Shown here one piece after another: positions 1-63,167 of a stretch of 64,000 bases of DNA. The notes beneath the pieces were generated by a model. That model was not told where the DNA came from. It did no database searches and saw only the letters and a program-made list of their open reading frames with translations. Numbering within the stretch: position 1 is the first letter of the stretch; every line of letters starts with the position of its first letter. The DNA is taken from positions 144,934 to 208,933 of the IMG/VR virus record IMGVR_UViG_3300027573_000779. One strand, 5' to 3'. The translations under genes were made by a program, and so were the position numbers.

Positions 1-515
1 TGACCGAACCGCGTAAGAATAGTAACTATTTCATTGTGTCCAGAATTTTGACACTCATCGTAGATAAAGCATTTGGCGTTCCAACTCATTCCTCTAGCAT
101 AATTAGGAGGATAAGAAAAAACCCTTTTCTCTTTTTCTAATGCTTTGACTTGATGTTTAGGCAGAAGTTCTTCAAGTTTGTCCGTAAAAGGAAGGTTATA
201 AAAATAAAATTTATCTGAAACCTCTCCGGGTAAAAAACCGATTTTAAAACTAGAACTTTCAACAGCAGAGCGAATATAAATAAGTTCCGAAACTCGTTTT
301 TGGTCAAGAAGTTTTAATCCGCAATAAACCGCCAAAAGCGTCTTACTTGTCCCTGCTGGACCCGACACAAATATAACTTTAGTGTTTTTATCTAACGCAA
401 TATCTATAAACTCTTTTTGCTTTTTAGTCCATTTAAATTCGCGTATATCAAGGTTTTCCTTAAGCTTGTCCCTTTGATAAACATAGAGAGACTCATCCGT
501 TTTCTTTTCTTTCAT
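1..515 (-). CDS. phoH: PhoH-like ATPase (partial, runs off window start; not in ORF track)
   Basis: Manual translation from ATG at 515: MKEKKTDES...VIFVSGPAGTSKTLLA...IYIRSAVES...IGFLPGE...ARGMSW...IYDECQN. Shows Walker A, GFLPG, RG and DEcQN motifs of PhoH. Confidence 0.9.
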   Translation of the reverse strand, partial: MKEKKTDESLYVYQRDKLKENLDIREFKWTKKQKEFIDIALDKNTKVIFVSGPAGTSKTLLAVYCGLKLLDQKRVSELIYIRSAVESSSFKIGFLPGEVSDKFYFYNLPFTDKLEELLPKHQVKALEKEKRVFSYPPNYARGMSWNAKCFIYDECQNSGHNEIVTILTRFG

Positions 516-542
516 ATTAAAGAACTACACTATGTATTACAC

Positions 543-1691
543 CTACCTAAACAGCATAGTTCCTTTATTCTCCTCGTGAAAAGTTTCAAAGTCCAAATTA
601 TAAATATCGGCAATAGACATTCCCTCCCGGTCAATATGGTTAACATTCTTGCCTAGTTTTTGCGCCAATGTTACTGATTTATCATAAGACAGCTTTTTAA
701 ACTCATATTCAACCTTCAAGCGCCCCTTCCGAAGCAGCGCTCTATCAATTGATTCTTTTTTGGCATTAAAAGTAACTATAATAGAAGTGTTTAAAATTGA
801 ACCCACAATGCCATCAGTTAAATTTAAAACGGTGCTGATGAGAGAATTGTTGCTTCCATCACGTTCCAAAACCGCTTTTTCGGCATCCTCTAAAATCAAA
901 ACAACATTGTTATTATCAGTTAATAATCTAATAAAATCAGGCTCAATTAAAGCATTAACCATATTGGTTGGCACGAATATAAATTTTCGTTGAACACACT
1001 TGGTAAGATGTTTAAGATAGCTGGTTTTTCCTGTGCCGGGGTCGCCGTGAAAAATATACAAACCAGACCGACTGGTGTTTAGGCGCTCAACAATTGAATT
1101 ATGAACATCAATAAATCCTTCTGGATAATTTAATTCTAAGTTAGTGTTTAGGTCGTCAAGAGGAAAATTACTTACTGCTAAGTTTCCAGAATGTCCCTTA
1201 ATTAAAAGACTAACTTCGGAGCGGTTTTTAGGAACAATTGGAAAACGTTCATTTAGTTTATTAAAAATATCAAAAAAATAAACGTCATCAACGCAAATAT
1301 CCAAACTATATTCACTCGCTTTCCCATGATTATTAACATTGAGTTTTAACAAACAATTCCCCTTTTTGTACTTACAAAAAAACACTTCATAAAAAGAACG
1401 GTTTTCGTCATCAGTAAAAATAGCCTGCGTTAAATTATCTGATTTGTTTGTATCACAATTAGATATAGTTTTTTCGCTTCGACTGTTCTTTACAATACTC
1501 CATATTTCAAAATCCTCCCCATCTAATATATGTTTAAAAAGCTCTTCGCTTATATCATTAAAAAAGTAGGTACTTGGTAAAGTTTTATAAAAACATTCAA
1601 ATAAATAGGGCAAACTAATATCACCTAAACTGGCATTATAATAATCAAAAAACTGAAAACTCTTATCCAAAGTTACTTTTTTAATTTCCAT
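543..1691 (-). CDS. AAA+ ATPase
   Basis: Walker A GDPGTGKT, Walker B LILEDAE, LNLTDG, and IDRALLRKGRL second region of homology. Confidence 0.9.
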   Translation of the reverse strand: MEIKKVTLDKSFQFFDYYNASLGDISLPYLFECFYKTLPSTYFFNDISEELFKHILDGEDFEIWSIVKNSRSEKTISNCDTNKSDNLTQAIFTDDENRSFYEVFFCKYKKGNCLLKLNVNNHGKASEYSLDICVDDVYFFDIFNKLNERFPIVPKNRSEVSLLIKGHSGNLAVSNFPLDDLNTNLELNYPEGFIDVHNSIVERLNTSRSGLYIFHGDPGTGKTSYLKHLTKCVQRKFIFVPTNMVNALIEPDFIRLLTDNNNVVLILEDAEKAVLERDGSNNSLISTVLNLTDGIVGSILNTSIIVTFNAKKESIDRALLRKGRLKVEYEFKKLSYDKSVTLAQKLGKNVNHIDREGMSIADIYNLDFETFHEENKGTMLFR

Positions 1692-2197
1692 TGTTAATAA
1701 TCTACTAAAATCTTTAATTTTTTGTCAATTGACAAATGCACCAAACCCTTCATAAAATTAAGAACATGGGTAAATGCGCTAAATGTGATAAAAGAGTTGG
1801 TTTAAACGAAAGTTTTTTAATTGAGTTCACGGCTGAAACTTCGGTCTGGTATCTCAACAAAAAACACTCAAACCGTTTTACGTTTTCAAACATGCTTTGT
1901 GCGGTTTGCGCCCAAAGAGAACTGAACAATGAAACTGCTAACCCTAACGGATGCAACGTTTTACGTAAAAGGGTTACCTGTAATTGTTGCAACGAAGAAA
2001 TTATGACCACCAACCACAAATGTCCCCAAATCCCGCTTTTTACATGATTGACAACCCAAAAAAACATAGTATCATAGCTAGAAAGGTGCAAACCTTTAAT
2101 CATATCACTAATCGTTGGGTAACATTCATATACTTGGATAAACGTGAAAAGTTCGACCCAAAGAACTATTTGGAACAAAATTTCAAATGGCGCATTA

Positions 2198-2410
2198 TTA
2201 AAGAGGTTGTGGAACAGCCTTGGAAAGCTGGCGCTTGACCAGCACTTTTTTAATTAATCGTTCCTTATGCTTTTGATAAAAAGCTTTTTGTTTTACCTTC
2301 ATACAACCAATACAGTGATACTGAAGACCATCTTTGGTCCCGGCCTGTTTGCGGAACTCGGTAAGAGGTTTCTCCCTCCAACATTTTGTGCAAGTTTTAA
2401 AGATTTCCAC
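2198..2410 (-). CDS. Small Zn-finger protein (HNH-associated N-terminal type)
   Basis: KTCTKC..KPLTEF....GLQYHCIGC; GTGTAA lies 8 nt upstream of the GTG start. Confidence 0.55.
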   Translation of the reverse strand: MEIFKTCTKCWREKPLTEFRKQAGTKDGLQYHCIGCMKVKQKAFYQKHKERLIKKVLVKRQLSKAVPQPL

Positions 2411-2609
2411 ACTACTCTTTACACATGATTGCGATTTTTGGCATTTATTGCTTGATTGGCCTGTTATATTCGGTTGTCTCTATTATCTGCCAAAGAAAGA
2501 AGCTGTTGATGTATGAAACATCTAAAGTTTTTCTTGTCCTTTCAATAGTTGTTTTTGGAACGTTTTTGTGGCCAATTGTGGTCTACTGGAAATTTAAAAA
2601 TTTACAACG

Positions 2610-4739: not shown

Positions 4740-4746
4740 AAAAACA

Positions 4747-4752
4747 GTGTAA
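4747..4752 (+). promoter_or_regulatory. GTGTAA promoter-like element (class II), 8 nt before subtilase ATG
   Basis: The same hexamer lies at the same 8-nt spacing before several other genes (2410, 51974, 57304, 62832). Confidence 0.65.
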
Positions 4753-4760
4753 TAGCTTTT

Positions 4761-6857
4761 ATGAGTAAGCTATTACTAGTTTTGTGTTTTTTAACTTTCT
4801 TTGGTTTTAATGTAAACGCTCAACAAGCTTGGATAGGCAAGTTTAAAGAGAATGGCGGCAATGGTTTAGCGGGAGAAATTGTTAATTCGCGTCACTTAAA
4901 GCACCTTGATTTGCATAGGTTTGAATTTAAAAACACCGAAGTAGCAGAAAAACTCCTTTCTAGTGGCCGATTTGAGTTTTTGGAGCCAGATGAAGAAATC
5001 TCTATAAGCGCTATACCAAATGACACTTTTATATCTTCTCAGTGGGCAATTACCAACATAGAAGCTGACTTAGGATGGGACATTTCAACGGGTTCTGATG
5101 AGATTGTTGTAGCTGTTGTAGATACGGGCATTTGGACCCAACACAGCGATTTAACCAATAATCTTTGGAAAGACCCTCTCTCGGGCGCAAGCGGTTGGAC
5201 TGCAAGAGGAGGGGTATTAACTGAAGGGGTCACAGATGACCATGGACATGGTACGCATGTCGCGGGAATTATTGGCGCAACAGGTAATAACAATAAAGGT
5301 GTTGCTGGTTTAAACTGGAAAGTGAAACTTGCGGGGTTTAAGTTTATAGGTTCAAGTGGAACGGGCAGCAGAGGAGACGCTTTTTTGTGTCTTGATAAGA
5401 TAATTGAATTAAAGAAACGAGGTATTAACATTAGAGTTGTAAACAACTCATGGGGGAGCACGAGTAAAGATTATACCTTATCTTTGGCAGCAGCTTTTAA
5501 AAAGCTAGAAGAAAACAACATCCTTGCAGTAAATGCCGCAGGTAATGAAAGTCAAAATGGTGACATTAACAGTTTTATGCCAGCTAACCTTACCAATAAT
5601 AATGTCATTTCAGTTATGGCTAGCACCCCCTTTAATAAGAAAGCATCTTTCTCCAACTTCGGGTATACCAGCGTTGATATTGCTGCTCCGGGTTCTAGTA
5701 TCTTAAGCACTGTGCCACAAATAAAAGCCGCTTTAGGAACTTCTACAGGTTATAAAATGGCTAGCGGAACGTCTATGGCCGCTCCTCATGTAGCTGGACT
5801 TGCTGCTTTAGTTTTATCTTTAAATCCTTATTTAACAGTTGACCAAGTTAAAGAAGTTATTTTAAATAATGCTAGTTATGATTTAATGGATAGTCCCACC
5901 AAAAGTCAAACAGGCGGCAAAATCAACGTTAAAAAAACTTTATCGAACCCTCTTGTTTATCGACCAGAGAAGAACCATAGTCCTGTTTTATTTGTTAAAT
6001 ATCCTACCAATGTTGTAGGGGGGCAAAGAATTACAATTTACGCATCTGCGATTGACCCGGACGGCGACCCTGTTAAAATTATTATCTCACCACTTGATAC
6101 ACTTTTTCGAGAAAAAACAAGCACAAACGCTGCCGGAACCAATGTTTCGTTTCTTTCACCTAAATATGTGATTGATTATGTTTGTAAAGCGCGAATTATA
6201 GCATTAGATAATAACGGTTCGTCCGCTGAACAATATATAAATATCAATATCCTTAAAAATGGTATTTATGCGCCAACATTTGGTTTAGAAACTGTTGTTA
6301 TAAATAATCCTACTAATTCTCTGCATCCTATTGCTCGCGCCTGCTTAACCGAAGGAAGTATTATACCTCAGAAGTTAACATATGGTTATCTTTTTGGATT
6401 AAACGGTGGAGTTCAGGCTAATACTAGTTTTTTTGGAACTTTAACCAATTGTGCCAGCAAAACCGCCACATATGCCAACGGCATTTCAAATAAATCAATA
6501 GTTGTTTATACTATAGCAGAGACTCCTAAAAAAGAGTTAGTTTATTCTCCTTATACTTATTTTAGAGTCGGCACAGAAACTAGCTCTACTACTCAAGCGC
6601 CCATTATAGACCTTAAACTGAGCGCCCAATCTGGTTACGGCCCTTTGAACATAGCCTTTGATTTTAGTGGATGTAAAGACCTTTATGGACCTGTAACTTT
6701 TATAATCGACAAAGAATCCAATGGCCAGCGCGTTTATATTCCCGAAAAAGGAACGTTGACCTATCCTAATGTGGGCACTTTCAAGTCAAGATTGACAGTG
6801 CAGGGAAAATATTTTAGTGTGTCGGCATGGTTTTACGTAACTGTGTTAACACAATAA
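4761..6857 (+). CDS. Secreted S8 (subtilisin-like) serine peptidase with C-terminal Ig/PKD-like extension
   Basis: N-terminal signal peptide; catalytic motifs VVDTG, HGTHVAG, AAGN, GTSMAAPHV. Confidence 0.93.
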   Translation: MSKLLLVLCFLTFFGFNVNAQQAWIGKFKENGGNGLAGEIVNSRHLKHLDLHRFEFKNTEVAEKLLSSGRFEFLEPDEEISISAIPNDTFISSQWAITNIEADLGWDISTGSDEIVVAVVDTGIWTQHSDLTNNLWKDPLSGASGWTARGGVLTEGVTDDHGHGTHVAGIIGATGNNNKGVAGLNWKVKLAGFKFIGSSGTGSRGDAFLCLDKIIELKKRGINIRVVNNSWGSTSKDYTLSLAAAFKKLEENNILAVNAAGNESQNGDINSFMPANLTNNNVISVMASTPFNKKASFSNFGYTSVDIAAPGSSILSTVPQIKAALGTSTGYKMASGTSMAAPHVAGLAALVLSLNPYLTVDQVKEVILNNASYDLMDSPTKSQTGGKINVKKTLSNPLVYRPEKNHSPVLFVKYPTNVVGGQRITIYASAIDPDGDPVKIIISPLDTLFREKTSTNAAGTNVSFLSPKYVIDYVCKARIIALDNNGSSAEQYININILKNGIYAPTFGLETVVINNPTNSLHPIARACLTEGSIIPQKLTYGYLFGLNGGVQANTSFFGTLTNCASKTATYANGISNKSIVVYTIAETPKKELVYSPYTYFRVGTETSSTTQAPIIDLKLSAQSGYGPLNIAFDFSGCKDLYGPVTFIIDKESNGQRVYIPEKGTLTYPNVGTFKSRLTVQGKYFSVSAWFYVTVLTQ

Positions 6858-44164: not shown

Positions 44165-44564
44165 CTAAAAAATGTCAAAAGTTTGGTCCCAAATACGGTC
44201 CAAAACTTGGTCTGCAACTTCATCTCTAAATTCACTAATGTCCCAAATTATAAGCGCAATCTGGCCCTTCACACTCCCCTCAACTTGGTCCGCTATTTGT
44301 CTTACGAGTGTGTCTTTAATTTTTTGGACCTTGTTATTTACTCTCATAAAAAATCTGGTTCCAATGGTTTAGAAGGTATTCCCAAATTGGGTCTGCAACA
44401 TCCTCAATCGTAAGTGCAATACTGTCTCTTTGGTCCCAAATCAGGTCTCTTACTGACTGCCCAACGTGGCTTACAATTTGGTCAACAAGGTGGTCGTCAG
44501 ATTCATGAATTCGATTTCTAATTTGATAAAGAGTTTCGCTCTCAATTTTGGTTAAATATATCAT
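44165..44564 (-). CDS. Two QVWD-family mini-proteins inserted between rIIA and rIIB
   Basis: QIADQVEG...ADQVLDRIWDQ; VDQIVSHVGQSVRDLIWDQ. Confidence 0.7.
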
Positions 44565-46666
44565 TTTTCCCTTATATAAGCCAAAAGGTCTTTTTGAATG
44601 TCTTCTTCCTCTTTCTCAAAACCGTAACTTTCCATTGCGTGTTTGATATAAGAATACAAAGGATAGTGTTTTAAAACATCGCTCTTAAGGCTCGCAAAAT
44701 CAACACTGGGCGTTTTAGTGCTTTCAGTCGCAAGCATGAAACCTTTCTTTGCCGAATTAATTACATTAATAATAGCAAGTTTTTGGCGTGCCTTTTTGGA
44801 AGCAACCTCTAGCTTAATATAGGCTCTCAAAAGCTCCGCAAAGGGAGAATCTTTTTTCACGCCAGACCATTTATACTCGCCCAAATAACTTTCCTCTATG
44901 CTGTCAAAAGCCTCTTTGTCTGCAATAAGCTGAGAAAGGTCTTCTTTGGCTATAGTCGCCTCAACCGCTTGAATTAAGTAATCCTTAAGAGTAACCCATT
45001 CGCTCAAATCTTCTTTAGCCACCAAAGCTTTCTTAAAACCATAGACTACAGGAACAGGATAATTAAGAGAACGTAAGGTGTCTAAAACCGACTGAATAAA
45101 TTTTGACCGTTTTTTGTCGTTTTCTTCCCAACAAACTTCATACCTGTCAATTTCAACATAGACCCCGCCCTCTTCAAGGTCTACTTCTGCAATATCCCAA
45201 AAATCACTTTTAGCCCTGCCATCAGGATTAAATACAAAGACCTTTTTGGAATTCTTCTCATTATTACCATTATAGGTATTGGGGGGCACAGGAAGCTCTT
45301 TAACCGACTTAAGTTGGGGAACCAAGTCTTCAAGCCCCATCTCTTTAAGTAGTAGCTCCCGATATTCGGGCTTAGTTGCCACAATCATCCAAACATATTC
45401 ACAATAAGTTTCTTTAAAATGATAGGAAACCCTGCTCTTACACCTTGTTGCGTCTTTAATGTAGACTTGCAAGTCTTTCTTAAAAGGCAATCTGTCTACA
45501 ATCTCTAAAGATACCTTTTTGCGCCCGTTCCTATACCAACGCTCAATGAAAACATCATTGGGCTGTAGATTATTACGCTTATAAAAGTCTTCAGGAACCA
45601 TAAAGTTAGTCCCCTTGACAGACTGACCGCCAAACTGAAGGTCTAAACCCTCAATAATATAGCGCAAGTTGCTGCTATAAGCTCCATCTAGAAACAAATC
45701 AGCCCAAATTTCTCTGGCGTTCCAAAGAGTTCTGGCACTGGCAAATTTAGCCTTTACCGTCTCTTCAAATCCACCAATAATTTCTCGACATAAAAGCAAA
45801 ATAGCATTCTTGGTCTTATCTGTATATTGTAAACCTTCCCGATTAACCGCAATATCAAGGTCGCCAATATTAAAATGAAACACTAAACCAGACTGAAGAA
45901 GACGTTCTAGTTTAGCATCAAGACTGGTAAAAACACTGGCGCGAATGGGATATGCAACCTGCCCCATTACCGCATAAGAAGTGGTTTGATTCTTATACAT
46001 CACCCAATTCTTACCACTAAAAGCCTCTTCCAGTGGAATTTGGTTATAGTAACGATTCCCTATAATTTTTGGCGCAACCTTCCAAAACCTAAAAACATCC
46101 TGTGCTTTTAGTCGAAATTCTTCAAAATCAAATTCATTAACAGGGACAATAATTTCAATCCCATCTGGCTCTTCAGTGGGGCTTTTATCCATTTGGGCAA
46201 TACGCCCTTCCTGTGAAGGGTCAATGAAAGCAGTGTAAGTAGTCTTAACGCCTTCCTGATAACTTACAATAGAAAAACTGTCCCCGTAAGCAAAACCCGA
46301 CTTGGAACCAATCCCCAACATCCCAATAGTCGCATTGGAATTTCTTTTCGTTGATTTGCAATACTTTACATAGGTATTGGTTACATCTTCATCGCTGAGG
46401 CCAGTCCCAAAATCGCGCACTCGAAACTCTGGTTCCAAAACATTAGGCAAGTGAACTTGGATAGGAAGGTCCCCTTTTCCAGCCTCTACATTAGCGTCAT
46501 AAGCATTACAGCTATATTCCCTGATAACAGCCTTGGTCTTATCCTCATAAAGACTGTTCCGTAGAATATGAAAAAGCATTGAAAAGTCTTGGGCATCAAT
46601 CCCAAAACTATTCACTTTCAAATCACCTTCTGTTTCAAGAATCCGGCTCTGTTGTGTTAAAATCAT
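44561..46666 (-). CDS. rIIA: rIIA-like protein (GHKL ATPase)
   Basis: LY.DK..AVIREYSCNAYDA, RDFGTGLS, STKRNSN..IG.LGIGSKS.FAY. Confidence 0.92.
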   Translation of the reverse strand: MILTQQSRILETEGDLKVNSFGIDAQDFSMLFHILRNSLYEDKTKAVIREYSCNAYDANVEAGKGDLPIQVHLPNVLEPEFRVRDFGTGLSDEDVTNTYVKYCKSTKRNSNATIGMLGIGSKSGFAYGDSFSIVSYQEGVKTTYTAFIDPSQEGRIAQMDKSPTEEPDGIEIIVPVNEFDFEEFRLKAQDVFRFWKVAPKIIGNRYYNQIPLEEAFSGKNWVMYKNQTTSYAVMGQVAYPIRASVFTSLDAKLERLLQSGLVFHFNIGDLDIAVNREGLQYTDKTKNAILLLCREIIGGFEETVKAKFASARTLWNAREIWADLFLDGAYSSNLRYIIEGLDLQFGGQSVKGTNFMVPEDFYKRNNLQPNDVFIERWYRNGRKKVSLEIVDRLPFKKDLQVYIKDATRCKSRVSYHFKETYCEYVWMIVATKPEYRELLLKEMGLEDLVPQLKSVKELPVPPNTYNGNNEKNSKKVFVFNPDGRAKSDFWDIAEVDLEEGGVYVEIDRYEVCWEENDKKRSKFIQSVLDTLRSLNYPVPVVYGFKKALVAKEDLSEWVTLKDYLIQAVEATIAKEDLSQLIADKEAFDSIEESYLGEYKWSGVKKDSPFAELLRAYIKLEVASKKARQKLAIINVINSAKKGFMLATESTKTPSVDFASLKSDVLKHYPLYSYIKHAMESYGFEKEEEDIQKDLLAYIREK

Positions 46667-50504: not shown

Positions 50505-51143
50505 TTATTTTTGCTTCAAAATGAAGCTTAACCACTCTACCCTTGGGACAGTTGAAATTTCGCTTGCCGCAGTCCTAGGTAAAGGTTTTTTAGGCTCATA
50601 AAGAAGTCTGTGTCTGAAATTTTCGATAGGCATATTCCCTCTTTCACTGTTTAAGTCCCTATGGGCCAAAACAATATTGGTCCACTCGTCCTTTCCACCA
50701 TGGGATTTGGGTTTAACGTGTTCTAAAGAAGCTTCAGCTAAAGTTAAGATTTTACCACTATAAGCACATTTCTTGCCATAATGACGATAAGCGTTACGTT
50801 TGTTTAGTTTTAACTCCCTGAGGGCTAGACCGTTATAGTTTTTTGCCCTCATCACAATCGGCGCTCTAATAGTTCTTTTAGAGGTATGAATTGGAATGTC
50901 CCATGAACGAACCGGTAAATTCATCCAAGCTTCTAAATTAACTGGTTCCCAATAGCTAACTTTATCGAAATTCGGTCTGCCATCATCATCTAATTCAAAT
51001 TCAATATCAATCCCTTGAGAGGCCATATTGCCATCTTCTGAAGTAGAAAAAAGATTGGTAAGAGCCTTCTTTATTGTCGCGGTGCCTACAACAATATAAA
51101 GACTATTAAGAACAAGAACAAGCTGTTCATTTAAAAGGTTCAC
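50505..51143 (-). CDS. HNH endonuclease
   Basis: VLVLN, CAYSG, SLEHVKPKSHGG...WTNIV.....N..RGN. Confidence 0.88.
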   Translation of the reverse strand: MNLLNEQLVLVLNSLYIVVGTATIKKALTNLFSTSEDGNMASQGIDIEFELDDDGRPNFDKVSYWEPVNLEAWMNLPVRSWDIPIHTSKRTIRAPIVMRAKNYNGLALRELKLNKRNAYRHYGKKCAYSGKILTLAEASLEHVKPKSHGGKDEWTNIVLAHRDLNSERGNMPIENFRHRLLYEPKKPLPRTAASEISTVPRVEWLSFILKQK

Positions 51144-51805
51144 TAAAAAGAATTGTGTCGTTAACTGACCAAAGTAAAGGACTTATATCATTACCGAAAC
51201 CAACTTTTCTTACAATATCACCCCAATCAGAAACTAAAAATGACTGATAAATCTGCGTATCAATTTTTCTTCTTACTACTTTTATCTGGCTATACGGATG
51301 ATTCCAAACTCGGTCGCGAAATATGTTTCTATTCATCGTAAATTTATTCAAAAAATTCATTCAAATAAATTGCATCGTTAAGCCTCCAACTTAAAAGAGT
51401 TAAATTGTGCCCAAGATAGGTTCTTATTTCAATGTCGTGCCAAACAGAAGTTGATAATGACTTTAAAATTTGTGTATGAATTTCTTCTCTGATTCTTTGT
51501 ATCTGTATATTCGGATGAACCAAAGTTTGGTTTAAAACCGTGTCTATGTTGTTCATTGTCTATTCAAAAACTTTACTAAATACAATTCCCTCCTCAATAG
51601 CCCAAACTAGACGATGATAAGAAAAAGGAATGGTCTTTTTGATTTCTAAACATAAATTTGAGTGAATCTCTGAGTTTTGTTGCACAAGAATTTTGTTTGT
51701 TGCCAGTTTTTCTATCTGGCTATTCGGATGAGTCCAAACTTGGTTCCAAATTATGTTTGTTTCCATTATCGTAATCAACTTTATCTTTGATAACCTTGGT
51801 GCCAA
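51127..51805 (-). CDS. Tandem triplet of HPxxQI mini-proteins (diverged QVW-family branch)
   Basis: RVWNHPYSQI / QTLVHPNIQI / QVWTHPNSQI with matching C-termini. Confidence 0.7.
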
Positions 51806-51974
51806 AAAGCGCCCCTAAGAAAACACTTAAATTTGTAGGAATTTCAGCTAATTCTCCATTTTTAAGTGAAACAATACCCCAAACAACAAAAAAAAGAAGA
51901 AAAGCAACCGTATTTGCTGTGTTAATAACACAAAACGCTCCGTCTTGCTGTTCACATAACTCCGCTATTCTCAC
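51720..51974 (-). CDS. Small two-TM membrane protein (holin-like candidate)
   Basis: Two hydrophobic segments and a charged C-tail; GTGTAA-N8-GTG upstream. Confidence 0.45.
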   Translation of the reverse strand: MRIAELCEQQDGAFCVINTANTVAFLLFFVVWGIVSLKNGELAEIPTNLSVFLGALFGTKVIKDKVDYDNGNKHNLEPSLDSSE

Positions 51975-52145
51975 ATATTACATTACACAAATTTTCAGGT
52001 TCTGGCCTTTTAAACTTGCTACAACTTGACCTATGTCTTTCTGGCTGGCTTAAATGCCAGTAATCGCCGCACTCGTTACACCTAGCCGCCCAATTAGCGC
52101 CGTCTACGATTGCACTTGGGAGTAGTGTATATTCAAGAATTGTGT

Positions 52146-52655: not shown

Positions 52656-53078
52656 TTACACCCAAACACTTTCTACGGGAACGGTACTATCAGAAATCCC
52701 TTCCTGTTTTAAATATTCTCTAATATTCTTCGAGCCTTCCGGGTTGTGACTGTGAACGTAAATTTCTGGAAGTGGCACTTTTGTCTTTCTACAATAACGA
52801 ACCAACCATCTGGCGCAATCAAACCCCGTTAACTCAGTAATCTTGGTATAGTCTATAGGTTTCTTGTGTATTTGCGCAATTTCCCATTCCATAATTGCAG
52901 ACCAATCTAAATCATGGTCTAAACTTACTACTTTAGGAATGCCATTTCTAAGTATAAAATCAATAAAATCCTTACCATTTCGCAAAACGACCCAAGGAAC
53001 AGTTTTTAAATGTTCGGGATATGCAATCCAATAAACCGCCTCAATACCAGAACGTTCATCGTCTAAAAACAAATACAT
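52656..53078 (-). CDS. Cyclic-phosphate-processing receiver-domain protein
   Basis: LFLDDER, VSLDHDL, TGFDCARWL, VHSHNPEG..NI. Confidence 0.88.
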   Translation of the reverse strand: MYLFLDDERSGIEAVYWIAYPEHLKTVPWVVLRNGKDFIDFILRNGIPKVVSLDHDLDWSAIMEWEIAQIHKKPIDYTKITELTGFDCARWLVRYCRKTKVPLPEIYVHSHNPEGSKNIREYLKQEGISDSTVPVESVWV

Positions 53079-53696
53079 ATTTCAATCAAAAACTCTACTC
53101 GTTTGTTTGTAAATCTCCTCAGAAAGTTGATATTTTATATTCCATAAACGGGAAACAGAAGGTCTCTGCATTTCAAAAGATATTACGCTAAAATTAAGTG
53201 AATCTGATATACTATTGATTGCATCCCTAACCTGTTTCGCTATTCGGTCCCGCAAAGCTATTTGCTGGCTCGTGTCTGTTGCCATACCTCATATTGATTC
53301 CGCATTTCATATTGAACTGCTTCTTGGATAGCTGTTTCTGCCAGCCCAGTATCATTTGTTATGCCCAATGGATAATAACGAAAACCAAGCCAATCCAATG
53401 CCTGTTTTGGAATAGTAATCGTAATACTAACTGGGTCTAGAATTTGTGTTTGTATCATCTATTTCGCAATATAAAGGTGAATTAAAAAATGGATACCATT
53501 CGGCCCAAACCGGCGTTCCTTCCTGTTCTTTTGGGTCATAAATGTAAGCGCCTAAATTAGTGCAACCCACAGCTATGCCATCAAACAGTTTAAGTTTTCG
53601 GCCAGAGTCAACTTTATAAACTCTGGCCTTTCTGCAAACCTCTGCGTTTATATACATACCACAGTATCTTACACTATGGTATGTTTGTTTTCAAGT

Positions 53697-55206: not shown

Positions 55207-55461
55207 TCATTTAGCAATCTTTCTATAATTTTGCTGCCAAATAGCTTTTGTTATATAAGAGGAGGCTTTTCTTACTTGTCCTTCTTCCATTTCTGGAAAG
55301 CAAGCATGAAGAAGTTCATGAATAAGGGTATTTAAGTAATTTTTAGACAACTGGCGAGGGTCAATTTCAATAAGTTTGTTATCGGGCCAAAACTGACCCC
55401 AAGCTCTTTCGCGTCCAAGCTTTCTCTCTACTATAGGGACTCTTTTTCTGCGCCGCTTCAC
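55207..55461 (-). CDS. Minimal HExxH metallopeptidase-like protein
   Basis: TLIHELLHA...E..V. Confidence 0.6.
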   Translation of the reverse strand: MKRRRKRVPIVERKLGRERAWGQFWPDNKLIEIDPRQLSKNYLNTLIHELLHACFPEMEEGQVRKASSYITKAIWQQNYRKIAK

Positions 55462-56017
55462 ACATAGTTTTACACCTATTTAGATACCTGTCAACTGTTT
55501 GTAACCTTACCGAATCTGAAGTAATTATACCAACCATTGGAAGGCCAGTAAACGAGCCGGTATTTAAACAAACTATACTATTTATCTTTTCTAACGTAGC
55601 CTGATGATTGTGTCCAACTATAACTACTTGATAATCATTATCTTGCGCAAATTTAACAGCGTTCCTCTTAAGTCCAACCTTAGAGAACCAAGAACAAAAT
55701 TGATGACCATGAATAACACACACATTAAAACCATTATTATTCCAGTGATAACTTGGTAATAAATAGTCTTTTAAATAATCTTCGACTCCAGAAAACGCCT
55801 CATGATTGCCAGAAATCAAAATAGCTTTTCCTTTTTGTGCTAAAAATTTTATCTTTTCTAAAAGAGATTTATCATAAGAGGTCATGCGCCCTTTATAATC
55901 TACAATATCTCCATTGACAATTAATTTATCAAAAGAGGAATTTAAAACGCCGCTTATTGCAGACCTGTCACACCATCGATTCCCAAGATGTAAATCAGAT
56001 ATTATTAGCGTTTTCAA
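55379..56017 (-). CDS. Calcineurin-like metallophosphoesterase
   Basis: SDLHLG, NGDIVD, GNHE, HGH, GHNH, NTGS. Confidence 0.88.
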   Translation of the reverse strand: MKTLIISDLHLGNRWCDRSAISGVLNSSFDKLIVNGDIVDYKGRMTSYDKSLLEKIKFLAQKGKAILISGNHEAFSGVEDYLKDYLLPSYHWNNNGFNVCVIHGHQFCSWFSKVGLKRNAVKFAQDNDYQVVIVGHNHQATLEKINSIVCLNTGSFTGLPMVGIITSDSVRLQTVDRYLNRCKTMCEAAQKKSPYSREKAWTRKSLGSVLAR

Positions 56018-56632: not shown

Positions 56633-56719
56633 TTTTAAAGATTTTAAACGAAATTTTTAAAAACACAATAAAAATTTTTGCTATTGACGTTTTAAAAAGA
56701 ATTGATACACTTTTAAAAT

Positions 56720-57046: not shown

Positions 57047-57312
57047 CGTTCAAACGAAGGAGAGGGAAGGGGTCGGTTCCGGCCCCTTTCCCTTTTATAG
57101 TAATAAGATAGGGTTTACAATCCCACTTTGTAGGAAAACGCCCTTTTTTCTTCTAAGCTCGAAATCCCATGCGCCTGAAATTTGATAAGGAATGCTAGTA
57201 AGATAGTTTTTCCCTTCAATTACAAAAAGATTAATGTCTGAAACGCCAGTCGGCAACTGGTGAATTCTAGACTGATAGTTGGTTATATCTCCTGTTACAT
57301 ACATAATATTAT

Positions 57313-58695
57313 TTACACTCCACTAGGTTCTAAAGATACCATTCCAGTGAAATAACTCAATGGTTGAGTATGGGTAGGCCAAAACCCAGTATAATAGTTA
57401 AAGTGTTGGACGTAACCTGTAGCAGTAAAGTATTGAGTTCTATAGGTCACTCCCGTAGCGCCGCCAAAACCAGTAATTACCACCACGTTCATCTTATAAT
57501 TACGATTTGGAACTACCCCTATACAATGAATGTGTATAGTGCCCGTTACATATTGTATTCCGCTAGTAGTGTTTTTTGGCCTACCATATCTAAAAGGAAT
57601 AACATTGTCATCTTCAGTTAGTTGAGTGGGGGCAGTAAAACCGGGATTATTCCACATTAAATTATTACCAATCAAATCAAAATCAATAGCATCAAAAGGA
57701 GATATCCAAGTTATTGCTGAATTAACACCACTGGTTTCTGAAGTTATTTCATTAAAAAAGGCGTTTTCAGCTAAAGGATTACCTATAGTAACAGCAAATT
57801 GTCTATTGTAATAATCATAGGTTAACAAAGGATACAAACTCCTTATCATTTGAAGACATTTACCTGTTTTTTGGGTAGCCGAACCATCAAGACGAATATT
57901 TAACGCTGTTTCAAAATAATAATCGCCGCTTCCGGGCAAGTCTTGGACAAGTACAAAGGTGCTTGGGCTACCATGACTGCTTGTGTCATAAAATGAAACA
58001 CCTATAGTATCGCCAGTATTAGGCACCCAGTTATCATTAAATTGAACCCATTTAGGACCGTTCACTGTCACTTCTCCAACTTGACCCGATTGAGGGCCAT
58101 TTAAAGCATAAACAAGCCAATCGGTCTGGTTAGACCATCCTGACAATTGACGCCCCCAAACAAAGTTTCCTGAAAGGTGTAGTTTGGTTTGAGCGCCAGT
58201 TTCTATCCCTGTAACTATCCCGCTTTGCCAAAGAGTAAAAATATCACCACCAAAGCCGCCGAAACCCCATCCTGTGCAAAAGAAAGCTTGGCCGCTGTTC
58301 CTGTTAAACTTGGTTATTACGCTCTTGGTTTTTCTAGTAGCGCTATCCCCATTCCATTGAGAGCCAAACATAGAAGGGGGAGCGCCCGAATCAAAAGGAT
58401 AAACAAAATCCCCAGTTAAAGCCTCTTCCCAACCAAAACTAGTTAAATCATGAAAATAATCATAAAAAGCCCCAGTGCCGGTAACAGTATAACCGCTAAA
58501 AACTGGGTAAATCCTTGATATTACGCTACTTACAAGTTGCCTATTTAATGTAATTCCGGTTCCTCCCGTAATTGCACTATAATACCCCGAGGCATAACCT
58601 GAAGCAAAAGGAAAGAAGGTATTATAAGGCTGGCCTGTATAATACCCATGAAGAGTGGCCTCAAAGTGTTGCTGCGTCCCGCTTGCGTATGACAT
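57313..58695 (-). CDS. Gly/Thr/aromatic-rich beta protein, probable virion/structural
   Basis: Many SG/TG motifs; GTGTAA element upstream (58706-58711); the next gene 57095..57304 also has GTGTAA-N8. Confidence 0.5.
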   Translation of the reverse strand: MSYASGTQQHFEATLHGYYTGQPYNTFFPFASGYASGYYSAITGGTGITLNRQLVSSVISRIYPVFSGYTVTGTGAFYDYFHDLTSFGWEEALTGDFVYPFDSGAPPSMFGSQWNGDSATRKTKSVITKFNRNSGQAFFCTGWGFGGFGGDIFTLWQSGIVTGIETGAQTKLHLSGNFVWGRQLSGWSNQTDWLVYALNGPQSGQVGEVTVNGPKWVQFNDNWVPNTGDTIGVSFYDTSSHGSPSTFVLVQDLPGSGDYYFETALNIRLDGSATQKTGKCLQMIRSLYPLLTYDYYNRQFAVTIGNPLAENAFFNEITSETSGVNSAITWISPFDAIDFDLIGNNLMWNNPGFTAPTQLTEDDNVIPFRYGRPKNTTSGIQYVTGTIHIHCIGVVPNRNYKMNVVVITGFGGATGVTYRTQYFTATGYVQHFNYYTGFWPTHTQPLSYFTGMVSLEPSGV

Positions 58696-59822
58696 TCATC
58701 ATACATTACACTTTTTTAACTAGTTCTTGGGGGATGTCGAAGGTTTTTACGAAATCTATTATTTCGTGTGAAATTTCAAGAGTATGGCAAATTGGGATAT
58801 AATATTCAGTTTTGTGGGATATCACAGCATCCACCCAAAAAGAAGCAGGAACCATTTTACAATCACTCTGTTCCCTATACTCATCACTTAGTTTTTGAAA
58901 ACGATAGTGCGCGACTTCTATAAACCACTTTTTAACCCTTTTAACTTTGCCTTCAGAATTAGCAAAAGCTAAAGTAGTTTCTTTTTGGCATTTATGTTCC
59001 TCAATAACACCTTGAAGGTAGGATATCTTTTTTTCAATAGTGTCAAAAAAGTCCTCTTTTAAGTGACCTTGTAAGTAAATTTTTCTATTGGTTTTTTTGT
59101 CTGCGTCTTCTACTGTGTCGTAACTAAAACCCCCAAAACTCCAACTGAATAATTCTAAAAAAACCGGAGGCTCGGTCATTACATCCCAAAGCGGACTGTC
59201 GTAAAACCCCTTAGCAAACGCCGCTGCTTTATAGATATTAATTTCCACTGTATTTAGTCTGACAATGACAGTTGTTTTTCTGCGCCAACCAAACTTAAAG
59301 CCATTAAACCATTGTCTTTGTTATTATCCACTAGACTCCGAATTTGCCCCGCAATATCGCCAATCCTTCTTTGTTGTTCGGCAGGTAAGGACGCTATTAT
59401 ACCCTTAATCATGAAAACAGTTTCTTCCTCTTCAGATATAAATTTATTCATTTTTGTTTATCTTCCTCTTGCTGTTTTGTTCACAAACTCCATTAAACAA
59501 ACTCTCGGAGCCACTTTGACCTTAACTGCTTTTGCAATATTAACTATAGAAAAAATAAAAAATATCGTCCCAAGAAATAACATTATAGCCCCCGTTACCA
59601 TCATATCACTCTCATTATAAGATTTTTGCGCCTTCCATTTGAAAAACATCCGCGCCAAAATAAAAGCAACAATAGCAAATAATCCTAGAACTGCCGCTAA
59701 AGAGCTATACTTAATAAGTTCCCAATTTAAAAACTCCTGAACCACCAAGGGGGCTTGTTCTTTGACAAAAACGGTCCCTTCTTGAAGGGTGCTGATAATT
59801 ATTTGATTTAAATTAGTGTCAT

Positions 59823-60197: not shown

Positions 60198-61719
60198 TTT
60201 TAAAAGGATAACAAAGTTTTTTGAAATGTCAACTCTCAAACGCCGAGGGGTTAATTTTTTGCCGCCTTTATAAAAGAATTAAAAATGCATACCAAAACAC
60301 TATCATGAACTTGGATTTTTGTAGGATTATCTAAAGTTGTGAAATCATCGCAGTATCCATAATAAATTTTACTCCAATCAATTTTCCCCCAAACCTTTTC
60401 GTATATTTTATATTTGATAAAATATTGTTGGTATGTTTGAATTTTATAAAAATCCATTTTACTCAATTATTGTCGCCGTTACTGTTCTTACTATTCTACT
60501 CGGAAGTCTAACAATTCCGGTTGTTTGATTAGTAATGGCATTTTTAAAGCTTGTCCTGTGAATAGGTCCTAGCCCAATAGTATGTTCAGAGCCTTCTATA
60601 CTATTTGACACCGTAATGCTAACAAGAGTCATTTTTTCTACTACAAATGATGCATTGGTTGTTAGAACGTTTGTTATAATAGAGCCAAAAAAAATATTTG
60701 GGTCATAATGCCTGATATTAAAAGAAATCCCATTAGTTGGACCTGAATAATTCCAAGTCATTTCGGTAGGAACATCTTGAGCAGTCGCAGTAAAAACCAT
60801 CAACAATCCAAAAAACTTCTTCATTTAAAAGAAGGATATCAAGCTCTTCTTTAGTCGTCAACAAAATTAGCAATAGTTTTAAAACCTTCATAGTTTATTC
60901 AAAATAAGGCAAAAGCATGAAAATTGTTTGGTACTTTCCAAAAACCTTACCGTGAAAGTAATAACAATCTCCACCTATAGCCGCAAACAGTGCATCTATG
61001 TAATTTGGTTCCTTATCTTCATCAAAAACCAACCAAGTGTCATATTTACACCCCTCCTGAATCCGCCCACCCTGCTCTAAAAGGATTGGTAGGAGAGCTT
61101 CTTTCTTCTTTTTTCCTTCAGGAGTAAGCACCCATTCGCCGGAAACTATTATGCCATATGTCATTTGTTTTTATAAAATTCATCTATTTCAACCCATTCA
61201 GGCACATTGCCTTTCCACCACCATTCGCCAACCCTCTGATGTCTTTCCATTGGCTCAGTAACTAATACTTTCTTAATTGCTGATAAATAATAAGCCGCTT
61301 CGTCATCTAAATAGGTGTCGCCTTCCATCTCTGGATGTGTTGCAGCACAAAAAATCCTCCCATTTTTTCTAATTCTAACAGCCATAACATTTATATTTAA
61401 TTATTTTTTTATGACCATAAATATCTTTGCTACCAATAAATACTTTTGGAAGTTTTATAATCCTGCTATCAGACTGAAACTGGTCAAGCGTGGGGTCAAT
61501 TATAGTTCCATCTTCCATTTCTAGCCAACAATGATGCGCTCTCATCAATTCTCCCTCCACAAGCGAGGTTTTAACGCCTATTGCTGATAAATAGCCCTGA
61601 AGTGGAAAACACATCATAAAACAGAAATTATCCGAAGACCTTCCGTTAAGCATACCCTTTCTGAAAGATGTGACCAACGAACGTAATTTAAATTTGCTTA
61701 TCACAAGCTTTCTTCTCAT

Positions 61720-61899
61720 TTAGTAAATAACCCTGTTTCTTCCGCCGCCGCCGAATGTCACTACGTATTCTACAAAATTTTTCCCATAGATTCCCCTAAT
61801 TTCGTGTCGTATTTTTGGCTTTTGTTTTTTAAATTGCATTTTTAAATTTGGAAACAATAAAAACGCCGTTAATCCAGTAAAGAAATTACGCCTGTTCAT
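61720..61899 (-). CDS. 59-aa ORF with twin-arginine N-terminus (not in track)
   Basis: MNRRNFFTGLTAFLLFP...; fills the gap between neighbours exactly. Confidence 0.55.
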   Translation of the reverse strand: MNRRNFFTGLTAFLLFPNLKMQFKKQKPKIRHEIRGIYGKNFVEYVVTFGGGGRNRVIY

Positions 61900-62831
61900 G
61901 TTATTTGCCTATATAATAAATGTGCTTGGACCCTTCCCAACTAAAACCTCTGCGTCCATTTTTATAATTAACAATAAAAGCTTCTTTGCCTAAAAGGATT
62001 GGCTCTTGCACACAAATAGAAATAATTGCTTTTTCAGCATGAACCTCCGTCCACATTTTCCCCATGTATACAATTCCCATTCCTTTAGCTGAGATAATTG
62101 TACCTACGCTTTCTTTAGAAGCGACTTCAAGATTACGTTCGCAACCAACCAAAACCAAACAAGCAATTAGGATTGTTATTAGTTTCATAAAACAATTTAA
62201 ATCATATTAGCCGCCGCTACCTCATCCTTTATAAAGTAACCGTTGTCATTGTGACCGAAAATCTCTGGCGCGACCTCATCAAAGAGTCCAATGTGCTCTT
62301 TGGGTATATAGAAAGAGTTAATAAAGCTACCAAAAAACCCTCCAAGCATTGGTCCTGCTAGAGTTATCTTCTTACCAACCAAGGCGTTGATTCTATCTTC
62401 AAGAGTTTTGGGATACATTGGACTAGGGTTGCTCATGCGGACGGAACCGTCTTCCATGGTATAAAACTTGTAGTATGTTGTTTCCATAAGTTTAAAGTTA
62501 ATGGTGTTGAAAAGAATAACCTTCTTTAAAAAAAGTATCCATATCAAGCGATAACTCTACCCTGTGTCGAGCACAAAACTCCTTGAATTCTTTAACAAAA
62601 TCATCCAGTTGGAGTTTCTCGTAGAAAAACTTTCGATGCTCCTCATAAAGCGCGTGCATTAAAGCAACATAATATGGATAATTGGTCTGCGCTTCATTTT
62701 TGAGGTTGTCTCGTATGTATTGGTCGAGAACATACGAAGATGGCACCCTTAACGACTCATTAGACTGGAAGATTTGTTTGGCATCTTCTTTAGCTGCTTC
62801 AGGAGTTTTCATAATATGTGTAATAATTAAT

Positions 62832-63167
62832 ATGAACTTAATCGTTCAAGCATCACTTACTGAACCGCCGACAGACTTTCTTTCTCTTCGCATTATTACG
62901 CAAGTCGCCGTGCAAAGCTTACATCTTGATTGCTTAATCGAAAGCGAGCAAGACATGAAAGATTTATACTTCCATTATCTAGTCAAAAAGGGATTGATGG
63001 ATTTTATTAGCGACATTATCACTCCAGATGACCATATTGAAGGTCTTCGGCTCGCTAACGAACCTGTAGACGCGCCCGTTATCAAAGTGAAAGCAGTCTA
63101 TCCGAATAATTCATTGTATGTCTTAGGTCAGGTGCAAAAAATAATATTGATGAAGTCATATTTTTAA
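62832..63167 (+). CDS. Hypothetical (start moved to MNLIVQ)
   Basis: GTGTAA (62818-62823)-N8-ATG. Confidence 0.6.
   Translation: MNLIVQASLTEPPTDFLSLRIITQVAVQSLHLDCLIESEQDMKDLYFHYLVKKGLMDFISDIITPDDHIEGLRLANEPVDAPVIKVKAVYPNNSLYVLGQVQKIILMKSYF

What the first reader, a model, noticed from the sequence alone, without database searches (positions are those of the whole stretch)
515..62834. Second promoter class: GTGTAA exactly 8 nt before the start codon
Seen: GTGTAA-N8-start at 4747 (subtilase, +), 62818 (+), 2419-2424 (-), 51983-51988 (-, holin-like) and 57313-57318 (-). Variants with N9-11 occur before phoH (GTGTAG), 58695 and 53657. In two cases it doubles as the upstream gene's Val-stop codons. 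These genes lack the class I promoter, and some are oriented against the local flow. Inference: a -10-only late promoter for a phage-encoded sigma (analogous to T4 gp55 TATAAATA), also near-leaderless.
Basis: partly seen in the sequence, partly recalled or inferred. Interest (0 to 1): 0.62.

Follow-up and report, generated by a model that had tools for sequence, protein, structure and literature searches.

The report
Phage late promoter GTGTAA, leaderless genes
A six-base word, GTGTAA, placed at least 8 bases before gene starts is very probably the promoter that this large uncultured phage and hundreds of its relatives use, through a sigma factor of their own, to switch on tail, packaging and other late genes, often as messages with no leader at all.

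Summary
The window is the last 64 kb of a 208,933-bp uncultured siphovirus-like phage. GTGTAA is not frequent overall. However, 25 of its 79 genomic copies lie in sense within 45 nt upstream of called starts (about 10x expectation, P about 4e-19).

- **Not a stop-codon artefact.** Among NNNTAA words ending 8-24 nt before starts, GTG-TAA is 16x enriched; the next best is 2.2x.
- **Conserved in relatives.** It is the top upstream hexamer in 79 related loci (20x) and two 140-kb relatives. It also appears in a 58% G+C relative whose sigma is 35% identical.
- **Geometry.** No -35 element is present. A conserved T then purine sits 8/9 nt after the word. No start lies closer than 8 nt, so I predict transcription starts at the 9th base and N8 genes are leaderless.
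- **Gene class.** 17 of 48 genes in the structural region carry it, against 6 of 156 in the early region. The early region instead uses TTGACA-N17-TATAAT promoters, also leaderless.
- **Sigma factor.** The phage encodes one sigma, just outside the window: ECF-like, two domains, with an invariant four-cysteine insert. It is not gp55-like.

Timing and the sigma-motif link remain inferred, because no RNA data were available.

The parts
4747..4752 (+). GTGTAA promoter element. Predicted start of transcription is 4761, the A of the ATG of the 698-aa subtilase (4761-6857), so the message is leaderless. It sits in a 10-bp hairpin (4749-4776) with the ATG in the loop.
62818..62823 (+). GTGTAA element, N8 to ATG 62832 (111-aa ORF 62832-63167). 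This is a lone plus-strand gene among minus-strand genes, only 19 nt from the divergent start at 62812. T/A at +8/+9.
2419..2424 (-). GTGTAA element, N8 to GTG 2410 (70-aa Zn-finger/endonuclease VII-like ORF 2198-2410). The gene runs against the local plus-strand flow. The word abuts the divergent ATG at 2425.
537..542 (-). GTGTAA element, N21 to the phoH ATG at 515.
51983..51988 (-). GTGTAA element, N8 to GTG 51974 (84-aa ORF 51720-51974 with one or two hydrophobic segments). 'Holin-like' is plausible but unproven.
53669..53674 (-). GTGTAA element, N11 to ATG 53657 (76 aa). Predicted start is 53660, giving a 3-nt leader. It lies in a 14-bp hairpin that also holds the ATG. It is the only site overlapped by a weak sigma-70-like match (TTGAAA-17-TAAGAT).
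55470..55475 (-). N8 to GTG 55461 (84-aa ORF 55207-55461 with an HExxH motif). It lies inside the end of the upstream phosphoesterase ORF.
57313..57318 (-). GTGTAA element that also forms the Val-stop codons of the 460-aa ORF. N8 to ATG 57304 (69 aa). The unit ends at the strong hairpin 57064-57091.
58706..58711 (-). GTGTAA element that also forms the Val-stop codons of the 180-aa ORF. N10 to ATG 58695 (460 aa). Predicted start is 58697, giving a 2-nt leader.

Best explanation
GTGTAA, often written AGTGTAAT with A/T-rich flanks, is the single recognition element of a phage-specific promoter class. It has no -35 element. It lies at about -14 to -9, and transcription is predicted to start at the 9th base after it, usually a purine preceded by T.

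Where the start codon sits exactly there (N8), the message is leaderless. With N9-12 the leader is 1-4 nt. With longer spacers an SD-like purine box appears.

The element is most likely read by host core RNA polymerase carrying the phage's own sigma factor. That gene is at genome 142461-143162, minus strand, 1.8 kb before the window. It is an ECF-like sigma-2 plus sigma-4 protein with an invariant four-cysteine insert.

The class drives the structural and packaging genes and a few scattered genes in the early region. These include genes that point against the local flow.

Shown here: the motif, its position, orientation and conservation, and the existence of the sigma.
For: Enrichment:
- The motif is about 10x enriched in sense before starts (P 4e-19). 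The reverse complement is only 3x, mostly from divergent promoter pairs.
- Among NNNTAA words before starts, GTG-TAA is 16x (P 2e-21) and the next best 2.2x, so stop-codon context does not explain it.
- Single-base variants reach at most 3x.

Conservation:
- It is the top upstream hexamer in 79 related loci totalling 952 kb: 218 of 477 copies, 20x.
- It is among the two most enriched upstream hexamers in the whole relatives G002 (21x, beside the overlapping AGTGTA) and G001 (15x, the top one).
- Orthologous genes keep the word while spacing (12-24 nt) and flanks vary.
- It persists in distant sigma clades. These include a 58% G+C contig, where 4 of 7 copies lie before 13 starts (P 7e-7). One clade uses GTGTAT instead (P 2e-4).

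Start-site geometry:
- Across relatives, T is 65% at +8 and purine 83-88% at +9, also at sites with N>=13.
- In the own genome 26 of 26 upstream sites have a purine at +9, and T-purine occurs in 18 of 26 upstream sites against 7 of 53 others (P 1e-6).
- There is a hard lower bound of 8 nt to the start codon.

Separate from the ribosome-binding signal:
- SD-like 4-mers occur in 2 of 80 spacers of 8-12 nt, but in 16 of 31 spacers of 17 nt or more.

Operon structure:
- Both robust divergent junctions of the structural region carry the motif on both sides. Lone opposite-strand genes have it within 14-19-nt intergenic gaps.
- Segregation by region: 17 of 48 structural-region genes against 6 of 156 early-region genes. 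The TTGACA/TATAAT class is the reverse, 2 against 25.
- The motif is avoided inside coding sequence relative to synonymous shuffles, mainly antisense: 24 against 38.5 (P 0.007).

Sigma factor:
- Sigma70_r2 scores 25.4 bits against a cut-off of 24.
- The family profile hits ECF sigma region 2 of SigR, SigW, CnrH, RpoE and SigH.
- The AF2 model has pLDDT 93.9.
- The N-terminal domain matches sigma-2 (SigE, rmsd 2.3 A over 73 residues). The C-terminal domain matches sigma-4 (SigD, Z 8.7, rmsd 1.9 A over 62 residues).
- No multisubunit RNA polymerase was found.
- The sigma gene sits in fixed synteny at the head of the terminase/head module in all relatives, behind a GTGTAA site.
Against: - No transcript data exist. 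None was listed for this phage, so the start site, the leaderless state and late timing are all inferred.
- The sigma has a well-formed sigma-4 domain, which in ECF sigmas normally reads a -35 box, yet none is seen.
- The T7-like RNA polymerase search had no positive control. Very divergent phage polymerases or a gp55-like factor could escape detection.
- Relatives were found through the sigma gene, so co-occurrence of sigma and motif is partly built into the sampling.
- Gene starts are my own calls rather than curated ones.
- Early-region sites are few (6-8), and some downstream genes there have no known function.
Confidence: 0.7

Rival explanations
1. The word is a promoter, but it is read by a host holoenzyme rather than by the phage sigma. 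The reader would be the primary sigma using a TGTA-type extended -10 without a -35, or a host alternative sigma, possibly helped by a phage co-factor.
For: - The early promoters here often read TG-TATAAT, so the TGTA core is shared.
- If TAAnnn were the -10 hexamer, the start would lie 6 nt after it, which is within the normal range.
- One site (53669) fits TTGAAA-17-TAAGAT.
Against: - The position equivalent to T-7 is not conserved: T 44%, A 38%.
- G1 and G3 of the word are strictly needed, since one-base variants are not enriched.
- There is no -35 in 123 sites.
- The word is kept in a 58% G+C relative that presumably has a different host, and it travels with the sigma family.
Confidence: 0.17
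2. The word acts in the RNA. It would be a non-SD translation-initiation signal or a processing site placed just before start codons.
For: About 70% of sites lie within 8-16 nt of the start codon, and these genes lack an SD.
Against: - Spacing runs up to 46 nt, and long spacers have their own SD-like boxes.
- There is a conserved T/purine pair at a fixed +8/+9 irrespective of the start codon position.
- Lone opposite-strand genes with 14-19-nt gaps need a promoter there, and this word is the only conserved element.
- Avoidance is strongest on the antisense strand of coding sequence, where a translation signal would be irrelevant.
- Back-to-back inverted copies occur at divergent junctions.
Confidence: 0.06
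3. The word is the operator of a phage DNA-binding regulator, either an activator or a repressor, and not the polymerase recognition element itself. One candidate is the conserved Zn-ribbon protein encoded just upstream of the sigma.
For: A conserved 107-150-aa Zn-ribbon protein is always encoded next to the sigma. Inverted pairs of the word exist.
Against: - Most sites are single and oriented.
- The distance to a start-site-like T/purine pair is fixed.
- No other promoter-like element accompanies the word.
- Thirty or so sites per genome with strict orientation towards genes is the pattern of a promoter element.
Confidence: 0.06
4. It is chance or a compositional artefact of TAA stop codons followed by closely packed starts.
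For: GTGTAA is not over-represented overall. Two window sites are Val-stop codons.
Against: - The conditional test on NNNTAA gives P 2e-21.
- 0 of 100 shuffles reach the N8 count.
- The result is independently replicated in relatives.
Confidence: 0.01

Closest known systems
phiEco32 / 7-11 type phage sigma promoters (consensus tAATGTAtA; 7-11: TGATGT plus TATA), as described in PMC4331800
   Same: A phage-encoded sigma-70-family factor reads a single -10-region element without a -35 box before middle and late genes. The TGTA core is shared with (A)GTGTAA(T).
   Different: - There is no detectable sequence similarity between the sigmas: tblastn against 50,697 phage records found none at E 1e-3.
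- The consensus differs, with G at the first position and AA at the end.
- This sigma carries an invariant four-cysteine insert.
- Start codons are placed at or within a few bases of the predicted start site.
- The host and lineage are uncultured.
T4 late transcription (gp55 sigma, gp33, gp45 clamp; promoter TATAAATA), reviewed in PMC2988020
   Same: The promoters are simple and -35-less. They are read through a phage sigma-family protein and drive structural genes. The element often overlaps the stop codon of the upstream gene.
   Different: - gp55 resembles sigma only in domain 2 and binds the sliding clamp, while gp33 occupies the flap (PMC2988020). Here sigma-2 and sigma-4 are in one chain.
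- The word is different.
- No gp55-like match was found.
- Clamp dependence is unknown.
Bacterial ECF (group IV) sigma factors, such as SigH, SigW, RpoE and SigL
   Same: The architecture is two domains, sigma-2 plus sigma-4. These give the best profile and fold matches. ECF -10 elements are GT-containing, for example CGTA or GTC (from memory, a lead and not a test).
   Different: - ECF promoters depend on a strong -35 box, which is absent here.
- The cysteine-rich insert lies between the domains.
- The gene is phage-borne and sits at the head of a packaging/head operon.
- No anti-sigma partner was shown (one search gave no answer).
Leaderless mRNAs (lambda cI from PRM; common in Actinobacteria, Deinococcus and Caulobacter; from general knowledge)
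   Same: The start codon lies at the predicted 5' end and there is no SD.
   Different: Here it seems to be the prevailing layout for both promoter classes of a phage. 20 of 35 early promoters have the start codon 6-8 nt after the -10 hexamer. N8 is the modal spacing of the GTGTAA class. This is not experimentally shown.

Membership tests
T4 gp55-type late transcription | The recognition protein is a gp55 homologue: sigma domain 2 only, with a C-terminal clamp-binding tail | tested here: not met
   The phage sigma has both sigma-2 and sigma-4 domains. tblastn against all cultured phages, T4-like ones included, gave no match at E 1e-3.
T4 gp55-type late transcription | Promoter TATAAATA centred at -10, with no -35 | tested here: not met
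   The element is GTGTAA. Only the lack of a -35 is shared.
T4 gp55-type late transcription | Activation by the sliding clamp and gp33 | not testable with these tools
   No assay was possible. I did not search for a gp33 homologue, for lack of a family model.
ECF (group IV) sigma factors | Sigma-2 and sigma-4 domains only, with region 2 similarity | tested here: met
   - Pfam Sigma70_r2 scores 25.4 bits against a cut-off of 24, and r4_2 is weak at E 0.17.
- The profile hits SigR, SigW, CnrH, RpoE and SigH.
- Fold matches are SigL (Z 9.1), SigD sigma-4 (Z 8.7, rmsd 1.9 A) and SigE sigma-2 (rmsd 2.3 A).
- By the tool's own note, Z values of this size are modest for helical proteins.
ECF (group IV) sigma factors | Bipartite promoter with a conserved -35 box | tested here: not met
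   No position from -40 to -7 relative to the word carries information in 123 non-redundant sites. K-mer tests found only A/T runs and the inverted word.
ECF (group IV) sigma factors | Co-transcribed anti-sigma partner | tested here: inconclusive
   A conserved Zn-ribbon protein precedes the sigma in all clades. The complex prediction gave no answer.
phiEco32 gp36-type phage sigma system | A single -10-region element with a TGTA core, read by a phage sigma, before middle and late genes | tested here: met
   The motif logo and gene classes here were compared with the consensus quoted in PMC4331800. That the sigma reads the word is inferred.
phiEco32 gp36-type phage sigma system | Sigma homologous to gp36 | tested here: not met
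   No tblastn match to any record of the phage collection at E 1e-3. Remote homology beyond the common sigma fold is not excluded.
Leaderless mRNA | The primary 5' end coincides with the start codon | not testable with these tools
   No RNA runs were listed. It is inferred from the 8-nt lower bound and the T/purine pair at +8/+9. By analogy, early promoters have the ATG 6-8 nt after TATAAT.

The most novel reading that the evidence does not exclude
A very large, globally distributed family of uncultured 140-210-kb siphovirus-like phages has over 1,000 sigma clusters at 90% identity and spans 34-58% G+C. Under this reading it runs its late programme through a new branch of ECF-like sigma factors. 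These carry a zinc-ribbon insert, need no -35 box and read (G)TGTA(A/T) at -14 to -9. The word co-evolves with the sigma clade: GTGTAA, GTGTAT, TGTAAAATA. Both early and late genes are expressed mainly as leaderless messages. At some genes the late promoter is nested inside a hairpin, so that only transcripts started there escape termination or occlusion of the start codon.
Probability: 0.4. Interest if true: 0.7.

Novelty: new variant of a known kind. Interest (0 to 1): 0.58.

Why it matters
- **Annotation.** It gives a ready, testable promoter rule (GTGTAA, start 9 nt downstream) and a candidate sigma for a large, abundant phage lineage with no cultured member. This allows operon and timing annotation of hundreds of metagenomic genomes.
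- **Sigma biology.** It adds an ECF-like sigma that seems to work without a -35 box. This bears on how sigma-4 and inter-domain inserts are used.
- **Translation.** It suggests phage-wide reliance on leaderless translation, which constrains the unknown host.
- **Tools.** A short, orthogonal sigma/promoter pair could also serve as a genetic part.

Tried and rejected
- **RNA evidence.** The look-up of sequencing runs listed no RNA run for a 6-kb structural stretch.
- **Literature.** Searching for the word with promoter and phage gave nothing relevant. Two further searches gave only the analogues cited.
- **Orthologues of window genes.** The 460-aa protein and the subtilase were not found in other viral contigs, apart from a fragment of the same phage. 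Site-by-site conservation of the early-region sites could therefore not be tested.
- **Distant sigma clades.** Pattern scans with distant sigmas found nothing. Exact look-ups gave mostly short contigs. The records behind L123 and L124 are not held, so the 182-kb high-G+C contig could be read for only 20.7 kb.
- **Host.** One sigma homologue lies on a contig binned with a Flavobacteriales MAG. Another is labelled Caulobacteraceae. I reject both as evidence: bins are unreliable, and the early promoters are canonical TTGACA/TATAAT, not Bacteroidota-type.
- **Sigma and Zn-ribbon neighbour.** Complex prediction returned no answer. This counts neither for nor against binding.
- **Family libraries.** PHROGs and Pfam gave nothing for most motif-driven small genes. 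'Holin-like' rests on hydrophobicity only, and no endolysin was found nearby.
- **One-base variants.** GTGTAG, TTGTAA and GTATAA as further promoters are only 2-3x enriched and not convincing.

Full report
**Where the window lies.** The window is bases 144,934-208,933 of a 208,933-bp virus record that is rated complete. G+C is 37-40%. I called 311 genes with a simple codon-usage caller, covering 93% of the genome.

The genome has four blocks:
- 1-36 kb, minus strand: replication and nucleotide metabolism, with DNA pol III alpha, DnaB, thymidylate synthase and dUTPase.
- 36-77 kb, plus strand: a class II ribonucleotide reductase and a long sugar-biosynthesis operon.
- 77-145 kb: structural and packaging genes. 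These include lambda-J-like and minor tail proteins and a 5,468-aa tape measure protein.
- 145-209 kb, essentially the window: about 156 mostly small genes, nearly all on the minus strand.

The candidate capsid and portal proteins and the sigma have no match in 50,697 cultured-phage records. The lineage is therefore uncultured.

**The observation.**
- In the window GTGTAA is not frequent as such: 23 copies against 30.9 expected.
- GTGTAA-N8-(A/G/T)TG occurs 6 times against 1.3 +/- 1.3, and 0 of 100 shuffles reach 6. All six coincide with the first start of an open frame.
- Genome-wide, 25 of 79 copies lie in sense within 45 nt before a called start. Those windows are 3% of positions, giving P 4e-19.
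- 31 of 79 copies are strictly intergenic, in 7.8% of positions.
- GTGTAA is the most enriched hexamer in the 30 nt before starts: 24 genes against 1.5 expected.

The obvious confound is that TAA is a stop codon and the next gene starts close by. It does not explain the result. Among all NNNTAA words ending 8-24 nt before starts, GTG-TAA is 16-fold enriched (P 2e-21) and the next best 2.2-fold.

The word is sharply defined, because one-base variants reach at most 3-fold.

**Anatomy.**
- The distance from the word to the start codon is 8, 10, 11, 13, 15, 18, 21, 24, 32 or 46 nt in this genome, and never less than 8 at intergenic sites.
- I gathered 123 non-redundant sites from relatives. The flanks are A/T-rich, with A preferred just before the word and T just after.
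- No position further upstream carries information, so there is no -35 box.
- The only enriched upstream word is the reverse complement of the motif, which reflects back-to-back divergent promoters.
- Eight bases after the word T is found in 65% of sites. Nine bases after it a purine is found in 83-88% and C in 2%. This also holds where the start codon is 13 or more bases away.
- In the own genome all 26 upstream sites have a purine at +9. T-purine occurs in 18 of 26 upstream sites against 7 of 53 other copies (P 1e-6). All nine window sites have T then purine.

A pyrimidine/purine pair at a fixed distance from a -10-like element is the usual signature of a start site. This is general knowledge of bacterial promoters. 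I therefore place +1 at the 9th base after the word and the word at -14 to -9.

The hard lower bound of 8 nt then has a simple meaning: a start codon cannot lie upstream of the 5' end. The few exceptions among relatives all have a second in-frame ATG further down.

SD-like 4-mers are found in 2 of 80 spacers of 8-12 nt and in 16 of 31 spacers of 17 nt or more. The word is therefore not a substitute ribosome-binding site. Long leaders carry their own.

**Promoter-like behaviour.**
- The two robust divergent junctions of the structural region (82,049/82,110 and 143,612/143,701) carry the word on both sides.
- In the window, two lone genes point against the flow: 2198-2410(-) and 62832-63167(+). 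They are separated from the divergent start by only 14 and 19 nt, and the word is the only element there.
- By region, 17 of 48 structural-region genes carry the word, against 6 of 156 early-region genes.
- A canonical class, TTGACA-N16-18-TAnnnT with AAAAAGAT in the spacer, shows the reverse: 2 against 25. Only one gene has both.
- In that early class the start codon lies 6-8 nt after the -10 hexamer in 20 of 35 cases. Early messages are therefore leaderless too. This makes the leaderless reading of N8 plausible.
- Inside coding sequence the word is rarer than in synonymous-codon shuffles. Sense is 17 against 23.4. Antisense is 24 against 38.5 (P 0.007). This is expected if stray copies fire.

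**Conservation.**
- The sigma gene (see below) retrieved 238 related viral contigs at 57-64% identity.
- In 79 of these loci (952 kb) GTGTAA is by far the most enriched hexamer before starts: 218 of 477 copies in 2.2% of positions, 20-fold. Spacings again start at 8.
- Two nearly whole relatives of 144 and 142 kb give 21- and 15-fold.
- Orthologous genes keep the word while spacing and flanks drift. One example is the ~650-aa gene after the terminase-like gene, with spacings of 12 to 24.
- In contigs that carry sigmas only 32-39% identical, the word is again before genes:
  - 4 of 7 copies before 13 starts in a 58% G+C contig (P 7e-7).
  - 3 of 6 in another contig, including phoH (P 3e-4).
  - One clade uses GTGTAT: 3 of 8 copies (P 2e-4), all with T/purine at +8/+9.
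  - Another clade perhaps uses TGTAAAATA, but the evidence is weak.

**The sigma.**
- A search of the genome with Pfam Sigma70_r2 found one gene, 142,461-143,162 on the minus strand, 1.8 kb before the window.
- It scores above the curated cut-off and has a weak region-4 match.
- It has over 1,000 relatives (90% clusters) in marine and other metagenomes, on contigs up to about 200 kb. Sources call them sigma-70 or sigma-24 family proteins. There are 430 clusters at 50% identity.
- An alignment of 114 members has four invariant cysteines between the two domains.
- Its profile matches region 2 of the ECF sigmas SigR, SigW, CnrH, RpoE and SigH.
- The AlphaFold model is confident, with pLDDT 93.9.
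- All leading fold matches are sigma factors. The N-terminal domain fits sigma-2 and the C-terminal domain fits sigma-4.
- No multisubunit RNA polymerase was found. The T7-type search lacked a positive control.
- In every clade the gene order is the same: Zn-ribbon protein, sigma, ~360-aa protein, ERCC4 nuclease, terminase-like protein, then head genes. A GTGTAA site stands before the Zn-ribbon gene here and in many relatives. The sigma may therefore amplify its own operon.

**Mechanism proposed.** Early genes are read by host holoenzyme from TTGACA/TATAAT promoters. The phage sigma then binds host core polymerase. Through its sigma-2 domain it recognises GTGTAA at -14 to -9 and opens the DNA, so that RNA starts at the 9th base downstream. 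Many of these messages begin with or within 1-4 nt of the start codon. They must be translated as leaderless mRNAs, with ATG or, in four genes here, GTG.

The role of sigma-4 and of the cysteine insert is open, given that no -35 box exists.

Shown: the motif, its geometry, its gene class, its conservation, and the sigma fold. Inferred: the start site, the timing, and the sigma-motif pairing.

**Comparison with known systems.**
- Functionally this is like T4 late promoters. It is not a member of that system, because gp55 has only domain 2 and works with gp33 and the clamp (PMC2988020).
- The closest analogue is the phiEco32/7-11 group. There a phage sigma reads a single element, tAATGTAtA or TGATGT, which shares the TGTA core (PMC4331800). 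The proteins are not detectably related.
- By fold and profile the sigma is ECF-like, but it fails the ECF hallmark of a -35 box.

I therefore rate it a new variant of a known kind.

**Limits.**
- No RNA data were available.
- Gene starts are my own calls.
- Relatives were sampled through the sigma gene.
- The early-region sites could not be checked in orthologues.
- The host is unknown.

Noticed in passing
whole genome (window 1-64000 included): GATC does not occur once in 208,933 bp, against about 442 expected from trinucleotide counts. GTAC is at 0.39 of expectation. The relatives G001 and G002 and most related loci are not depleted. This looks like strain-specific restriction avoidance rather than a family trait.
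   Followed up: partly
window, minus strand: first hexamers near 11536, 13456, 14035, 15966, 23955, 25593, 26317, 31758, 39856, 44112, 48896, 52357, 60227, 63967; plus strand 1729, 2048, 7073: This is the early (class I) promoter: TTGACA, a 16-18-nt spacer that often holds AAAAAGAT, then a (TG)TATAAT-like hexamer. The start codon follows 6-8 nt later in 20 of 35 cases, so early messages also appear leaderless.
   Followed up: partly
window minus strand, about 14509, 22752, 25109, 25609, 31774, 33306, 33532, 39388, 39872, 44128: A repeated intergenic element, GCCCTGCGG(C)GCTTGAGCA, is often preceded by a short inverted repeat. It is followed either directly by ATG or by the class I -35 box. Its function is unknown.
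   Followed up: no
window 4749-4776 (+); window 53652-53681 (-); genome 43838-43865 (L011:3838-3865): Strong hairpins enclose the GTGTAA word and the start codon (dG -13.9, -18 and -14 kcal/mol; z -3.5, -6.0 and -3.6). Transcripts coming from upstream would hide the start codon. At 4749-4776, where a T-run follows, they might terminate. Transcripts started at +9 would lack the 5' arm.
   Followed up: partly
genome 115243-131649 (L014:15243 to L015:11649), outside the window: The tape measure protein is 5,468 aa (PhageMin_Tail domain near the N-terminus), which implies an exceptionally long tail. Its gene has a GTGTAA site at N21 followed by an SD-like box.
   Followed up: no
window 4761-6857 (+) and genome 179-2848 (-): There are two subtilase (Peptidase_S8) genes at opposite ends of the record. 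Each lies behind a GTGTAA site (N8 and N10). The second also has Ig-like domains.
   Followed up: no
genome 143163-143612 (-), L016:3163-3612, and its orthologues in L023-L126: A Zn-ribbon protein of 107-150 aa (CxxC...CxxC, invariant) always lies immediately upstream of the sigma gene. It could be a partner or regulator of the sigma. The complex prediction gave no answer.
   Followed up: partly
L123 (sigma P0258) and L126/L127 (sigma P0246): In distant sigma clades the upstream word seems to change, to GTGTAT and perhaps to TGTAAAATA. This hints at co-evolution of sigma and promoter, but the samples are small.
   Followed up: partly
window 52656-53078 (-), 55379-56017 (-), 55207-55461 (-), 44561-46666 (-), 63846-63922 (-): The window holds a cREC_REC receiver-like domain protein, a calcineurin-like phosphoesterase, a small HExxH protein, an rIIA-like protein and a tRNA-Met gene.
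   Followed up: no
genome 143701-144708 (+), window 2198-2410 (-), genome 98191-99078 (+), window 50505-51143 (-): There are several homing-endonuclease or HNH-like genes. Two of them (the 335-aa and the 70-aa) have their own GTGTAA promoter and point against their neighbours, as expected of mobile genes that bring or acquire a promoter.
   Followed up: no
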